Source: Amoeboaphelidium protococcarum X5 (Eukaryota; Fungi; Aphelidiomycota). Taken from it: DNA of 64,000 nt. Positions 34,947 through 51,636 of the stretch are shown here, one piece after another. The notes beneath the pieces were generated by a model. That model searched no databases and was not told the DNA's origin. It worked only from the letters and a program-made list of their open reading frames with translations. The stretch spans positions 214,615-278,614 of the forward strand of contig JALDTO010000098.1 of the NCBI GenBank assembly GCA_023515725.1. The letters are read 5' to 3'. Every line of letters starts with the position of its first letter. Within the stretch, counting starts at the first letter, position 1. The translations under genes were made by a program, and so were the position numbers.

Positions 34947-36176
34947 TCAATCTTCCTCTTCATCTTCACTATCAGAAGCTGGTAACTCGGTGTCCTGATC
35001 AATTTCAAAGTCCTCGTCGCTGTAATATTGAGCTTCCTCTTCATCTTCAGACAGGGACATCTCCTAACCCTTAGATTCTTCCACATTACTCGTTTATGCA
35101 ACCGACTCGTCAAATTTAACCTTCTTTCTCTCAACATTAGCCTCTTGCTCTTGACGGCGCTTCTTCTTTAACTGAATACGCTCCTAATATTTACGATGCT
35201 TCTCCTTGGCCTCTGCAGGAGTCAGTTTAATAACGTCATGATAAATCACCTCACCATCACAGAATCCATCCTAAATCTTTCTCAACTTCATATCAATACG
35301 AGGTCCAATCTCAGTCAACTTGATGGCGCGTTATTAAGATTACTTATTATTCTGACCGACATACTTCTCAGGAAGAGTGACTAGAGACTTATCAGCAGCA
35401 TCTTCAACGTCCGACTCTGATACGACTGCATCTCTAAGAACATACTCACTGATATCCTCAAACTTGTGCAAATCCGGGATATCAGTCTGGATAATACGCT
35501 TCAAACCCTTACTCACACCGACAATCTTCACATTAATGTAATAATGTCTAAAGCTTACAGACTTGCGCCCCTTGTCATAATTAATCAACACAATTCTACG
35601 ACATTCTGACGCGTGAATCTTCTATAGATTAAGAGATGGAAATATATTCTGGAACATTGTGGCCATAAGCTTGACGTGTTTATCTTCGGAATTGAAGTTA
35701 TTAAGTACAAGCAGAGGAGCCTGAGAGTACTCTTTTCCAGGACTTCTTGGCTTTGCCTGGCACGCAATAATATCTCGGATAAGAGCGTATTATTCGATTT
35801 TAAAAGTCAAGGTGGGACCTTTAGGCGACTTGGCAATTCTCAGACTGGTGGAATTGTCAGTCTGTGACAACAGCATCATGTGCGATACCCCCATAAGACC
35901 GGCTACACTAACGAAATCCTTCAACTTGTTCTTTCTACGTGCCTTCAGCTTTGCAGCAGTGTTTGGCTCCATCACTTTACGGATATCAAGTAAAAGTTGA
36001 TTCGCCGAGGTGGTGAGCTTGTTGGTCTAGATCACAAAAGTCTTTGGTACATTCTTCAAATTCGGATCATCCTCCTACTTCTTGTGCGTTCTCTTCTTCT
36101 TCTACACATTTATTATAATTACCAGTAAATAAACTATTGTCAATATTATAAATAAATAACATCTTACTCTAACCAT
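34947..36176 (-). CDS. SSF1: Brix-domain ribosome biogenesis protein Ssf1/Peter Pan; intron 36102-36167
   Basis: MVR|KKKRTH, RKVMEPNTAAKLKARRKNKLKDFV, GPTLTFKI, FRHY, IKLTEIGPR. Confidence 0.92.
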
Positions 36177-47305: not shown

Positions 47306-48923
47306 ATGAGTAACGACAATTAAATGCTTACTTCAAAATAGTAGCGATATGATAGACAATTGAGGTAGGCTTTAATACATTTAGATTATGCGAATTCAAT
47401 AAACATTATATTCATGTAGATTGTGGCATGAGCATGGATAGTAACGGTTGGATGAGAGTCACGTACTTTTAATTAATGCGGATGCTACTGGGAGTGAGGT
47501 GTTGAAGAATTTAGTTCTGCCAGGGATTGGATAGTTTACTGTGATGGATTAAGATTTGGTTACAGAGCTGGATTTGGCTAGCAATTTCTATGTCGATCAT
47601 GAATCTATTGGTTCTCCGCGTGCTGATACCGTTTGTAAACGGCTGATGGAGTTGAACGAAGCTGTCATTGGTCACCCTGTTATTCCCACTGATGGTTCTT
47701 ATAAGAAACTATTGGAAGATTCCGATTATTTGAAATAATTCACATTGGTTATTGCAAGTAATCTTCCACTTGACGTTCTTATTCCACTCTCAACGCGGTG
47801 TAATGCTAATAGATAGCCTCTAGTTGTCGTATATACTTGCGGATTTTATGGTTATGTCAGATTGCAACTTCCAGAGCATTGTGTGATTGAAGCTCATCCA
47901 GAGAATGTCATAGACTTGCGTATTGCTGATCCGTGGAGTGAATTACGTGAACTTGCCGCGGAAGTTGATCTATAAAACAAGGATTCCATGTACAAGTCTC
48001 ATATTCCATATTCTCTACTGCTTTTATCGTACTAACGCGTGTGGAATGAGCAGCACGATACTCAACTCTGTAGACGGGACTTGGAGGAATTTAAAAAGTT
48101 TATGCTCAGCGATGCTCCTCAGGATGACTCTGAAAACTATCATGAAGCTTGTCGCAACGCTTACAGATTGGTTTAGCAGTAATAGAAATTACCTTCAAAT
48201 TTGGAGCAATTGTTTGCTGTGAATACAAAGTTGACCTCTGATACTGAGGATTTCTGGTTCTTGGTTCAGGCATTAAAGGCATTTTACAAAAGTAGCAATG
48301 ACTAGTTGCCTCTAATAGGATCTCTACCTGACATGAAAGCTGATACTGAACAGTACATCTAGTTGCAACGTGTTTACAAAGCGAAAGCTACCGAAGATTG
48401 TTCGATAATGCAGTAAAATGTTGATTAACTTACGAAAGAGCATGGTAGACCATCTATCAGTGCTGATCTAGTTTAAAAATTCTGCAAGAATGCATAATTT
48501 ATTCGCGTCGATTAGTATTCTACAATCGCTGATGAGTTCAAGTCGCAGTAACTAAATAGTGAAAAACATTTAGAGGATGCAGATGCGATTTATATCTCTT
48601 TGCGTGCAGCACTAAAGTTTGCCTCAATAAATGGACGAATGCCCGGTTATGGAGTTGATGACAGTTGGGATTAGGATGTACAGTAGCTTCAATCAATCAC
48701 TCAGGAATTGTTGTAACAGCGCGTATTGACCAATTAATTGCTGAAAACACTTTATGAATTTGCTAGAGCTGGCAATGCCCAAGTGCATTCAACTTGCGCA
48801 TATATTGGTGGTCTGGCTAGTCAGGAGTGTTTGAAGATTATGACAAAGCAGTACATTCCAGTGAACAACACTATTATCTATGATGGTATGAATTCGCTTC
48901 CATCCATACGAAAATATGGGTGA
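47306..48923 (+). CDS. NAE1: NEDD8-activating enzyme E1 regulatory subunit (NAE1/APP-BP1/Ula1); intron 47365-47419
   Basis: YDRQLR|LWHEHGQ, GSEVLKNLVLPGIG, LPDMKADT, AYIGGLASQECLKIMTKQYIPVNNT. Confidence 0.92.
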
Positions 48924-49179
48924 TCATCTGTTAAATAGTTCTAGGTGCTTATTATAAATAAATCTTAAATTTTCCTGTAATGGAAGATGTGTAGTCGCAA
49001 AGTTCTAAAGTCCAAAATTTCCGCGACTAAGCTTGAAATTTGAGCGTTTATGAAGCAGTGTGCAGCACCACCTCGTACCTTAACGTGTATAAAAAGCTTA
49101 AGATGCAAAGACAGCATAGCAAAAATAATTAATTGGTCATATTCTCAAAATCAGAATATCAACGTAGCATTATGACACC

Positions 49180-49779
49180 TCATTGGCCGAACTATAATCG
49201 GACCATCATAAAATTGCCTTCAAACGGTACTTGACAAATTATTTAGGGCGACGGAATGTAGCTTGCCATTTTTCTTCTCATGTCCTAATGATTGCTGTAA
49301 TCTACTAGAACATCCTAAAAACGACCAGATTATGGGCACTTGGCAACTCGTTCAAGATAGCTTTATTATATTTCTCTCTGCTGGGCCTCGAGCAGTGCAA
49401 TTTTATTAATCAGGGGCTACTCGTGCTCCATACGATCTTCAATCATTAGCACCAATTCTGGCAGCTCAAAGAAATCAGCCTATCGGCGCAAAATGGATAG
49501 CGTGGCATAATCGATTCCTAGCTCCAGTTCATCATAACGCAAATAATTCAGAACCCATCTAAAGGCTGTGCCATCCTAATCCAGGAACATGGGATCAACA
49601 GTGCGGTGCCAGCGGTCCAACCAAACGCGAAAAAATGGCGATTTTTACAAGGTTTCTGCTGATGACGCGTAAAAACGACCGCCGACGTTAAGTGCCACCA
49701 GATTTGCTTAAATATGACCTGCGAAAAGTAGTAGGCAGATTGCCAGAGGTGCCAAAATACGGCGGATATAGGAATGCAT
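49180..49779 (-). CDS. Secreted BTB/POZ (KCTD/T1-type) domain protein, 199 aa
   Basis: Correct frame absent from the ORF track. MHSYIRRILAPLAICLLLFAGHIQA signal peptide, then LVALNVGGRFYASSAETL..SPFF..FLDQDGTAFRWVLNYLR..QADFFELPELV. Confidence 0.85.
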
Positions 49780-50421
49780 GCTGATCTTCTAAATCGTGAA
49801 GTGTCGAAGTTGACGCGGACTAAAGAGAGGAGTGATATTGAATGTAAAGGCATCAAGGGGCAGTTTAGAGATCTTAATTAAATTACAAAACATGTGCCTA
49901 TAAATGGCTTATTTACTGTACATCTATAAAATTGAACCAGATGGCTTACAATCATTCTAAAAATTTTAAAGTAATGACATTAAAATTTCACATCATGATG
50001 AATTTGGGCAGGGAGCAGATATAATGAAACAAGATCATCTCTTTTAGAATAAGTAATCATACACTTGAAACTAATTTCACATTACCGTATGTATATAGCG
50101 CGGAGAGTAAGTTTACAGAGGGAGCCGTCTACAACAGCAAGGACCGAATGTAACAGAGATAGCAACGATTCAAGAATATGCCTGGTGCATTAACAGCCAA
50201 TCATTTTGATCACACGGACAGTCGCAGCGTTGCGCCCGGAATTCGTCTTCTCACGCGGAATTTCCCTCAGCCTGATCACTCGCTCTCTTTCGTTTCTCCT
50301 TACATCAAGTCATTGGATTTGATTATAATTTGTCTCTCTCTCTCTCTTATCATTAAAATAATCAAGTTAAGTGACCTGAAATTATCGTAATCTAATACGG
50401 TAGTGTGAAAGTAACTAAAGG

Positions 50422-51636
50422 ATGACACAGAATATGAACGGTAGTAATTTCTAAAGTGGTAGATAGCAGAAAGCTTATACTAGCGCTCCATCCTCATCAA
50501 TTCCAATATCGCGCTAGTAGTAGTAATAGCATGGATTTCTGACATCTCATTAATCTACTTAGCTGTAGCGATAACAATAACAACTATTGTAATCGCGTCA
50601 GAATTAATTTAATCATCAATTTGGTGGTGTTGATGGTAACGGTAATGGGAATTCTGGATTGATGCTTGGTAATCAGTAGCAGTAATCGTAATTTCTCACC
50701 AGTCCTAATAATCTCATGATGCCGTAAAGTGCACCAGTCACTTTTGGTGGTGGAATGTCGAATTATGCAGCGATGCGGTAAAGTGCTGGTGGTAATTTCT
50801 CCTTTGGGTTCAATCAGTAGCAGCAGTAGCCATAATAGCAAATGTAGACGATCAATCCTCAAATGCTGCATGATGATCACCTATTGGATGAACTAACTGC
50901 TGACATGCTACTGAATGATGACATGTTCCCACTTAATTTGGATGGACATTAGTAAAGCTAGAATGATCTCTTATCTCCTAGTAATAATCCGAATGATCTT
51001 GGCGATGACATGGATGATGGTTGTTCTCCGTACTAATCCACATCTCCCATCATATTTGGCAGTAGTAGTTTTAATCCTAGTGCATTGTCTGCTGGTAGTT
51101 AGGGATTTTAGCGAAGTGCTAGAGGTAGTGGTAGTTCACTTTCAGGTGCTGTGAACAGTGCCGATACTAAGCCTCGCGCTATCATCAGAAAGGCGCGTGC
51201 CAGCTCTAATGCTCACTCTGTAAACACGAGTCAGGAGTTTGATGTTGATGTCAAACCTGGTGCTGGTAATAGCAGTAGTAATTCTCATATCATCAGTCAG
51301 TCATTTCCTGGTAGTACACTCTCTAATGATACAATCAATGAGGATGATAGCTAGTCTGGTAGTCTGCATAAGCACATCAGCGAGCTGGAGAAGCGTAGAA
51401 GGCGGCGAGAGTCACATAACGCGGTGGAGAGGCGACGAAGAGATAATATCAATGAGCGTATTTAAGAATTATCTACCATGGTTCCTCCTCTACCTGCGGG
51501 TGAAGATGATGGCAAGATGCATAAAGGGTCCATTCTGAAGCGATCTATTGACTACATTAGATATCTCTAACGCGAGAATGAACATCTCAGGCATAGACTC
51601 AAACGCTACGAATAGTCTTTTGGCGCCATTGAATGA
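50422..51636 (+). CDS. bHLH-Zip transcription factor (MiT/TFE-Rtg3-like)
   Basis: 404 aa. Q/N-rich N-terminus. KRRRRESHNAVERRRRDNINERIQEL..KGSILKRSIDYIRYLQ. Confidence 0.88.

What the first reader, a model, noticed from the sequence alone, without database searches (positions are those of the whole stretch)
49180..49779. Signal peptide fused directly to a KCTD-type BTB/POZ domain: candidate Cullin-3-hijacking effector
This gene is invisible in the ORF track. The 199-aa protein has a textbook signal peptide (basic n-region, ILAPLAICLLLF h-region, IQA cleavage site) followed at once by a T1-type BTB domain (LNVGG, FLDQDG..FRWVLNYLR, QADFFEL..L), a short coiled coil and a small C-terminal domain. 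BTB/KCTD domains act in the cytosol or nucleus as oligomerisation modules or Cul3 adaptors, so secretion makes most sense if the protein is delivered into host cytoplasm. It lies tail-to-tail with the NEDD8 E1 subunit gene, which is probably coincidental.
Basis: partly seen in the sequence, partly recalled or inferred. Interest (0 to 1): 0.8.

Follow-up and report, generated by a model that had tools for sequence, protein, structure and literature searches.

The report
Small KCTD-type protein with secretion-like leader
An algal parasite (Amoeboaphelidium, which reads TAA/TAG as glutamine) has a real 199-residue gene joining a signal-peptide-like leader to a KCTD-type BTB domain, an unusual pairing, but nothing yet shows that the protein is secreted or touches a host ubiquitin ligase.

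Summary
The minus-strand frame 49180-49779 is an intact 199-codon gene with 12 in-frame TAA/TAG and one terminal TGA. Public annotation already holds exactly this model, and two Amoeboaphelidium protococcarum 'hypothetical proteins' are 87% and 81% identical.

- **BTB domain:** residues 28-110 match Pfam BTB_2 (33.6 bits, cut-off 21.4). They match KCTD15/1/16/5 in the PDB (E about 1e-9). The predicted fold agrees (Z 12.5).
- **Leader:** residues 1-25 are a short polar start, a 14-residue uncharged hydrophobic core, then G-H-I-Q/K-A. All four known copies keep it. It resembles a native signal peptide of this genome and is too short and polar-flanked for a membrane span. None of 117 other BTB_2 proteins sampled has one.
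- **Selection and copy number:** dN/dS is 0.33 against 0.03-0.15 for the neighbours. There is one copy per subgenome, and no relatives were found outside the genus.
- **Not shown:** no signal-peptide predictor was available, no RNA run was listed, and the C-terminal 80 residues match no family. Secretion is therefore plausible (about 0.5). Delivery into the host and Cullin-3 capture are conjecture (about 0.1).

First readers of this scan noted several other 'signal peptide + BTB' genes on other pieces of this genome. None was followed up. The one I looked at could not be verified.

The parts
49180..49779 (-). Whole coding sequence: 199 codons plus the TGA stop (49180-49182), single exon, read with TAA/TAG = Gln
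   Evidence: The product is identical to database protein P0001. There are no indels across three genomic copies. dN/dS is 0.33.
49705..49779 (-). Leader, residues 1-25: polar start, a 14-residue uncharged hydrophobic core (residues 8-21), then G-H-I-Q-A. This is the candidate signal peptide, with cleavage inferred after Ala25.
   Evidence: It is predicted as a separate low-confidence helix at 2-25. It lies outside every BTB alignment. dN/dS is 0.92, and all four core substitutions are hydrophobic-to-hydrophobic.
49450..49698 (-). BTB_2 (T1/KCTD-type BTB/POZ) domain, residues 28-110
   Evidence: Pfam PF02214 scores 31.9 bits on DNA and 33.6 bits on the protein. PDB KCTD15/1/16/5 match at E 1e-9 to 1e-7. 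VIA-align gives Z 12.5, rmsd 2.5 A over about 95 residues. dN/dS is 0.28.
49342..49461 (-). Predicted long helix, residues 107-146 (last BTB helix continuing into a linker or possible coiled coil)
   Evidence: AlphaFold2 model, pLDDT about 80-90. hhalign to KCTD21 extends weakly to residue 150.
49183..49341 (-). C-terminal part, residues 147-199: predicted beta-alpha-beta-beta with two conserved cysteines (148, 182). It has no family assignment.
   Evidence: no Pfam hit; modelled alone: poor; no profile match to KCTD6/21 C-terminal domains; conservation. dN/dS for residues 121-199 is 0.24.
49780..49870 (-). Conserved upstream block (90% identity between homeologs), probably the 5' UTR or core promoter. 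It holds an upstream ATG whose frame differs between copies.

Best explanation
This is an intact, selected, single-exon gene of an Amoeboaphelidium aphelid, a parasitoid of green algae whose nuclear code reads TAA/TAG as Gln. It encodes a small, lineage-restricted KCTD-like protein: a T1-type BTB oligomerisation domain (28-110), a long helix and an unassigned C-terminal part of about 50 residues. A 25-residue leader precedes it. The most likely mechanism is as follows (inferred, not shown). The leader acts as an ER signal peptide and is cut near Ala25/Asn26, immediately before the first BTB strand. The roughly 174-residue protein then assembles through its BTB domain into an oligomer, as KCTD proteins do, inside the secretory pathway, and is released at the parasite surface or the parasite-host interface. 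There it would act as a multivalent binding scaffold. Shown here: the gene, the genetic code, the BTB domain, conservation of the leader and its signal-peptide-like physical properties. Inferred: the start codon, ER targeting, cleavage, oligomerisation, destination and partner.
For: The gene is real and under constraint. It has no indels over 600 nt in three copies, while the flanks carry frame-breaking indels, and omega is 0.33. The BTB_2 domain is supported.

Leader properties:
- It has a 14-residue uncharged core with a mean Kyte-Doolittle value of 2.9-3.1.
- The three aphelid proteins rank top 3 of 120 BTB_2 proteins for this measure.
- Only 1 of 38 window ORF N-termini reaches 2.5.
- On an approximate Hessa scale the best 12-mer scores -2.0 and the best 19-mer +2.3 to +3.2. 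The native calnexin/calreticulin signal peptide of this genome scores -1.6 and +4.7. A true membrane-span-like N-terminus in the window scores -3.25 for its 19-mer.
- All four sequences keep [IV]LAPL..CLLL.AGHI.AN, with Ala at -1 and Ile at -3.

Start codon: upstream in-frame sequence is frameshifted between copies and not conserved as protein. The ATG at -74 is out of frame in this copy, which argues for a short 5' UTR. Public annotation uses the same start.

Precedent: relatives of aphelids add signal peptides to otherwise cytosolic enzymes and do secrete them (microsporidian hexokinases, PMC6460350).
Against: No RNA run was listed, so the transcription start is unknown. In two of the three genomic copies examined (L002 and L009) an upstream ATG at -75/-78 is in frame and could add 25-26 residues. 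The polar start has net charge +2 only in this copy and about 0 in the other three. BTB/KCTD domains are known only from cytosol and nucleus. The mature part has no N-glycosylation sequon and only two cysteines. The parasite has its own cullins, so a purely internal role is possible.
Confidence: 0.5

Rival explanations
1. One reading: the secreted protein crosses into the algal cytoplasm and acts as a substrate adaptor that captures host Cullin-3. This is a special case of the best explanation.
For: The architecture is KCTD-like, and full-length KCTD5, KCTD1 and KCTD7 are the best Foldseek matches. The leader is signal-peptide-like. The protein is small, restricted to one genus and evolves 2-10 times faster than its neighbours. 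There are precedents for secretome candidates carrying a BTB domain (Plasmodiophora PbPE17, PMC8282356) and for secreted 'cytosolic' proteins in microsporidia.
Against: There is no evidence of secretion, translocation, infection-stage expression or Cul3 binding. Omega is 0.33 with no sign of diversifying selection. The gene is single-copy per subgenome with no expansion. The nearest solved relatives by sequence are KCTD15/1/16, which to my knowledge do not bind Cul3. The trophont engulfs host cytoplasm, so lasting control of host ubiquitination may bring little benefit (inference).
Confidence: 0.1
2. An endogenous KCTD. The hydrophobic N-terminus is an uncleaved membrane tether or packs inside the oligomer. 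The BTB domain faces the parasite's own cytosol and works with the parasite's own cullin on membrane-proximal targets.
For: Every characterised KCTD/T1 domain is cytosolic (established knowledge). The genome encodes at least two full-length cullins per subgenome, one 114 kb away on the same contig. This appears to be the only BTB_2 gene found in the genome, so it may fill the ordinary KCTD role. The start region has net charge about 0 in three of four copies, with a Lys just after the core, which leaves orientation open.
Against: The hydrophobic core is only 14 residues, contains a proline and has polar flanks. The best 19-mer is unfavourable for membrane insertion, unlike a real span in the same window. 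Sampled KCTDs lack such a segment. A uniformly hydrophobic helix cannot sit on a soluble surface (inference).
Confidence: 0.27
3. Gene-model artefact at the 5' end. The real protein starts elsewhere (upstream ATG or unseen upstream exon), so the hydrophobic stretch is internal or untranslated.
For: The transcription start is unknown. A pyrimidine tract plus TAG about 45 nt upstream looks like a splice acceptor. Upstream ATGs exist, and with TGA as the only stop the frame stays open for 72-93 codons. This genome does place signal peptides on separate first exons.
Against: Upstream in-frame sequence differs by frameshifting indels between copies and is not conserved as protein. The next downstream Met (residue 64) would cut the BTB domain. 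The ATG has A at -3. The apparent CAG acceptor inside the leader is absent from the other two copies. Three independent annotated models use the same start.
Confidence: 0.1

Closest known systems
KCTD family (human KCTD5, KCTD1/15, KCTD6/21, KCTD4): soluble T1-type BTB proteins, mostly pentamers, several of them Cul3 substrate adaptors
   Same: It shares the BTB_2 domain (33.6 bits). PDB hits are at E 1e-9 to 1e-7, and hhalign probability is 98.7-98.8% over residues 20/24-115. Size is similar, as is the layout of BTB, linker and small C-terminal part. Full-length KCTD5/1/7 and KCTD4 are the best whole-model matches.
   Different: It has a hydrophobic N-terminal leader, absent from 117 other BTB_2 proteins sampled. 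The stretch after 'TLxKxP' is six residues shorter. The C-terminal part has no detectable homology to KCTD C-terminal domains. No relatives were found outside one genus.
Kv channel T1 tetramerisation domain
   Same: It belongs to the same Pfam family, with weak sequence matches to Kv4 T1 (E 0.05-0.9).
   Different: There is no six-helix channel body. The only hydrophobic segment lies before the domain, not after it, and is too short for a membrane span.
Microsporidian secreted hexokinases (signal peptide added to a normally cytosolic protein)
   Same: The logic is the same: a parasite from a lineage related to aphelids carries a leader on a protein type that is cytosolic elsewhere (PMC6460350).
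   Different: For the hexokinases, secretion has been shown experimentally. Here it has not. The protein family is also different.
Plasmodiophora brassicae putative effector PbPE17 (signal peptide, three ankyrin repeats, predicted BTB domain)
   Same: It is a predicted secreted protein with a BTB domain from an intracellular protist parasite of a photosynthetic host (PMC8282356).
   Different: PbPE17 has ankyrin repeats, and its BTB type was not compared here. No sequence relation was tested.

Membership tests
KCTD / T1-type BTB proteins (Pfam BTB_2, PF02214) | BTB_2 domain above Pfam's gathering score | tested here: met
   It scores 33.6 bits against a cut-off of 21.4, over residues 28-110 and model positions 1-90 of 94. 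On DNA read through stops it scores 31.9 bits.
KCTD / T1-type BTB proteins (Pfam BTB_2, PF02214) | BTB fold | tested here: met
   The AlphaFold2 model has pLDDT 84-93 in the domain. VIA-align gives Z 12.5, rmsd 2.1-2.6 A over 91-97 residues to the KCTD13/15/5/9 BTB domains.
KCTD / T1-type BTB proteins (Pfam BTB_2, PF02214) | Soluble protein without a channel body (distinguishes KCTD from Kv channels) | tested here: met
   The protein has 199 residues and no hydrophobic segment after residue 25.
KCTD / T1-type BTB proteins (Pfam BTB_2, PF02214) | C-terminal domain homologous to a known KCTD C-terminal domain | tested here: inconclusive
   There is no Pfam hit in residues 115-199. hhalign to KCTD6/21 stops at residue 115/150. 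Whole-model matches to KCTD5 and KCTD4 span most of the length, but with rmsd 12-14 A or TM 0.57. The domain modelled alone is poor, pLDDT 60.
KCTD / T1-type BTB proteins (Pfam BTB_2, PF02214) | Homo-oligomer (usually pentamer) and, for a subset, Cul3 binding | not testable with these tools
   No multimer prediction or binding assay was available.
Eukaryotic ER signal peptide | Located at the true N-terminus of the translated protein | tested here: inconclusive
   The start is supported by comparing three copies and by public models. No RNA run was listed.
Eukaryotic ER signal peptide | Hydrophobic core of about 7-15 residues, shorter than a membrane span | tested here: met
   The uncharged core is 14 residues (8-21), conserved in four sequences. 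Its 12-mer and 19-mer insertion scores resemble those of a native signal peptide and differ from a membrane-span-like N-terminus in the window (the scale is approximate).
Eukaryotic ER signal peptide | Positively charged region before the core | tested here: inconclusive
   Net charge is +2 in this copy (two Arg). It is about 0 in the other three, which have Asp4 and Arg7.
Eukaryotic ER signal peptide | Small residue at -1 and small or aliphatic residue at -3 of a cleavage site | tested here: met
   I-Q/K-A followed by N is invariant at -3 and -1 in four sequences. This is read by the rule of thumb only, without a predictor.
Eukaryotic ER signal peptide | Function: ER import and cleavage | not testable with these tools
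   This needs SignalP-type prediction, a secretion trap or N-terminal sequencing.
Host-translocated effector acting as a Cul3 adaptor | Secreted, delivered into the host and expressed during infection | not testable with these tools
   No RNA run was listed and no localisation data exist.
Host-translocated effector acting as a Cul3 adaptor | Typical effector genomics: family expansion or diversifying selection | tested here: not met
   There is one gene per subgenome. Omega is 0.33 overall and 0.24-0.28 in the folded parts. That is faster than the neighbours at 0.03-0.15, but still purifying selection.

The most novel reading that the evidence does not exclude
A eukaryotic parasitoid exports a KCTD-type pentameric BTB adaptor into its algal host, where it recruits host Cullin-3 to destroy chosen host proteins. 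To my knowledge this would be the first functionally shown secreted T1/KCTD-type ubiquitin-ligase mimic from a eukaryotic parasite. With the other leader-bearing BTB-like genes noted in this genome, it could belong to a wider set of exported ubiquitin-system mimics.
Probability: 0.08. Interest if true: 0.75.

Novelty: new variant of a known kind. Interest (0 to 1): 0.35.

Why it matters
If the leader works, a protein module known only from cytosol and nucleus is being sent through the secretory pathway of a parasitoid that sits next to Fungi in the tree. That would give a concrete and easily tested candidate for how aphelids handle their algal hosts, about which almost nothing molecular is known. 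It would also extend the microsporidian habit of putting signal peptides on cytosolic proteins to a second related lineage. If the leader does not work, this is simply the genome's one divergent KCTD-like gene. As it stands it is a reasonable secretome candidate, not a demonstrated effector.

Tried and rejected
- **Pfam on stop-free pieces:** the pieces, including a 67-residue piece from the homeolog, gave nothing. Piecewise scans are therefore too weak in this genome, and the read-through genome search was needed.
- **RNA evidence:** no run was listed.
- **Upstream extension of the ORF:** the first ATG of the TGA-delimited frame is at 49980. I rejected it because the copies are frameshifted relative to each other there.
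- **Intron acceptor inside the leader:** the CAG at codons 20-21 is not conserved in the other copies, so I rejected it.
- **Paralog search with the 67-residue piece:** it found only the homeolog.
- **Word-based homolog searches:** the whole protein and residues 26-199 found only the genus's own three proteins.
- **Profile search:** it was swamped by animal KCTD6/21. It served only as a sample for N-terminal hydrophobicity.
- **The one exhaustive search:** I spent it on the 67-residue piece, before a protein id for the whole protein was available. It is therefore blind to relatives of the C-terminal part.
- **C-terminal part folded alone:** pLDDT was 60 and the topology differed from the full-length model, so I did not search with it.
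- **Peptidase_C1 as a second signal-peptide control:** no match in the genome search.
- **Another 'signal peptide + MATH-BTB' note:** C98:526944 onward has a hydrophobic start, but its pieces hit no Pfam family. It remains unverified.
- **Not attempted:** handing the read-through translation to tools as typed letters.

Full report
**What is there**

On the minus strand, 49779 down to 49180 reads as 199 sense codons plus TGA. It contains 12 in-frame TAA/TAG and no internal TGA. A bacterial-code ORF list does not show it. Across the window, long open frames of up to 1,425 codons appear only when TGA is the sole stop.

The assembly is 23.6 Mb in 346 contigs, and the window is C98:214615-278614. 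The closest database proteins are labelled Amoeboaphelidium protococcarum. That species is reported to read TAG and TAA as glutamine (PMC6299283). A CAG/TAG swap at codon 134 between the two genomic copies fits this code.

**The gene is real and already annotated**

The genome holds a second, collinear copy on contig C142, 88.7% identical over 3.2 kb. A stop-free 67-residue piece of that copy was used in the exhaustive protein search. It returned a 199-residue protein, P0001, identical to the TAR = Gln translation of the window gene. The same single-exon model is therefore already on public record.

Two more 199-residue proteins from an A. protococcarum assembly (GCA_023515745.1) are 87% and 81% identical, and both are named 'hypothetical protein'. 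One of them matches the C142 copy at 197 of 199 residues.

Three genomic copies align over the 600 nt without any indel, whereas the flanks carry 1-, 3-, 4- and 5-nt indels. By the Nei-Gojobori method with code 6, dN/dS values are:
- whole gene: 0.33
- residues 1-25: 0.92 (8 nonsynonymous and 3 synonymous changes)
- BTB domain: 0.28
- C-terminal part: 0.24

The flanking genes give 0.146 (ThiF-type gene) and 0.033 (HLH gene). The gene is thus constrained, but evolves faster than its neighbours.

**The BTB domain**

- Pfam BTB_2 scores 33.6 bits (cut-off 21.4) on residues 28-110. It scores 31.9 bits when the DNA is read through the stops.
- PDB sequence matches are KCTD15, KCTD1 and KCTD16 (E about 1e-9), KCTD5 (1e-7), and Kv4 T1 only weakly.
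- An AlphaFold2 model (mean pLDDT 80) shows a helix at 2-25, the BTB fold from residue 27, a long helix at 107-146 and a beta-alpha-beta-beta unit at 154-196.
- VIA-align gives Z 12.5 to the KCTD BTB domains.
- Foldseek ranks full-length KCTD5, KCTD1 and KCTD7 first. The Atlas shape search ranks KCTD4 first, TM 0.57.
- Profile-profile comparison with KCTD6 and KCTD21 gives probability 98.7-98.8%, but only over residues 20/24-115, or to 150 for KCTD21.
- The last 50-80 residues match no Pfam family. Modelled alone, they fold poorly.

**The leader**

Residues 1-25 lie outside every BTB alignment. They comprise a short polar start, a 14-residue stretch without charged or amide residues (8-21), and then G-H-I-Q/K-A before Asn26. 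All four sequences keep this, and every substitution in the core is hydrophobic-to-hydrophobic.

No signal-peptide predictor was available, so I used simple measures.
- **Hydrophobicity against other BTB_2 proteins:** the maximum 12-residue Kyte-Doolittle mean is 2.9-3.1. The three aphelid proteins rank top three among 120 BTB_2 proteins gathered here.
- **Hydrophobicity against the window:** only 1 of 38 first-ATG N-termini of long ORFs in the window reaches 2.5.
- **Controls:** the native signal peptide on exon 1 of this genome's calnexin/calreticulin gene behaves the same way. A true membrane-span-like N-terminus at 34950-36176 does not.

The segment therefore looks like a cleavable signal peptide rather than an anchor.

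Caveats:
- The start region carries +2 only in this copy.
- The transcription start is unknown, because no RNA run was listed.
- An upstream ATG is out of frame here (-74) but in frame in the other two copies (-75 and -78).
- The upstream in-frame sequence is not conserved as protein, which favours the annotated start.

**Context**

- The convergent neighbour is the NEDD8 E1 regulatory subunit. The order NDK, HLH, BTB, ThiF, Omp85 is kept in the other assembly. Within one genus this says little.
- The genome has its own cullins.
- The Pfam searches found one BTB_2 gene and one ankyrin plus double-BTB gene per subgenome. The latter has no leader. These counts are lower bounds.
- No paralogs of this gene were found.
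- No relatives outside the genus were found. The exhaustive search used only the first 67 residues.

**Reading**

The best-supported account is a lineage-restricted KCTD-like protein that enters the secretory pathway through a cleavable leader. I put this at about 0.5. A membrane-tethered or purely internal KCTD is at about 0.27, and a 5' gene-model error at about 0.1.

There is no expansion, no diversifying selection and no expression or binding data. I put it at about 0.1.

Two precedents exist. Microsporidia put signal peptides on cytosolic hexokinases and secrete them (PMC6460350). A Plasmodiophora secretome candidate carries a predicted BTB domain (PMC8282356).

**Earlier notes of this scan**

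First readers listed several other 'signal peptide + BTB' genes on other pieces of this genome, and none had been followed up. The one I could reach, C98:526944 onward, has a hydrophobic start, but its BTB could not be verified piecewise.

**Limits**

The read-through translation was never typed into a tool. All searches used stop-free pieces by reference, or the database protein P0001.

Noticed in passing
window 47950-51198 (L001) versus L002 (G000:C142:383403-386651); L009: The genome carries two collinear homeologous copies of this region at 88.7% nucleotide identity. The C142-type protein is 197/199 identical to A. protococcarum MP228_001648. The window-type protein is only 161/199 identical to that assembly's other copy (MP228_008231). 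The two assemblies seem to share one subgenome and differ in the other, which would fit hybrid origins.
   Followed up: partly
window 49780-49870 (minus strand, upstream of the ATG): A 90-nt block is as conserved as the coding sequence (90%). It contains a pyrimidine tract plus TAG that looks like a splice acceptor. It also holds an upstream ATG that is out of frame in this copy (-74) and in frame in the other two (-75, -78). This could be a regulatory upstream ORF or the 5' UTR. It could not be resolved without RNA.
   Followed up: partly
window 47388-48920 (+): The convergent neighbour is the NEDD8-activating enzyme regulatory subunit (APPBP1/ULA1-like, E 6e-11 for the last 61 residues). A cullin gene lies about 114 kb away on the same contig (C98:378419-380395). 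Having three cullin-pathway genes on one contig is probably chance.
   Followed up: partly
L010 (G000:C181:249315-253445) and L011: The calnexin/calreticulin gene puts its signal peptide on a short first exon. An intron follows that begins GTAAGC and ends in TAG. This is a useful local example of native signal peptides and of 5' introns in this genome.
   Followed up: partly
window 34950-36176 (-): This 409-codon ORF begins with a strongly hydrophobic 17-residue run followed by a lysine cluster. It looks like a membrane anchor, and it is the only window ORF more hydrophobic at its N-terminus than the finding.
   Followed up: no
L012:945-2072 (G000:C98:526944-528071, +): This is another first-reader 'signal peptide + MATH-BTB' gene. 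It has a hydrophobic start without basic residues. None of four stop-free pieces hit any Pfam family at E <= 1, so the BTB and MATH calls remain unverified.
   Followed up: partly
L004:1021-2787 (G000:C98:1703170-1704936, -) and its homeolog on C189: An ankyrin-repeat protein with two Pfam BTB domains and an ordinary polar N-terminus. It shows that conventional BTB proteins of this genome do not carry a leader.
   Followed up: partly
window 49548-49856 (-): The 102-residue ORF that the bacterial-code list shows here is the +1 frame of the BTB gene. It is an artefact of the code, not a gene.
   Followed up: yes
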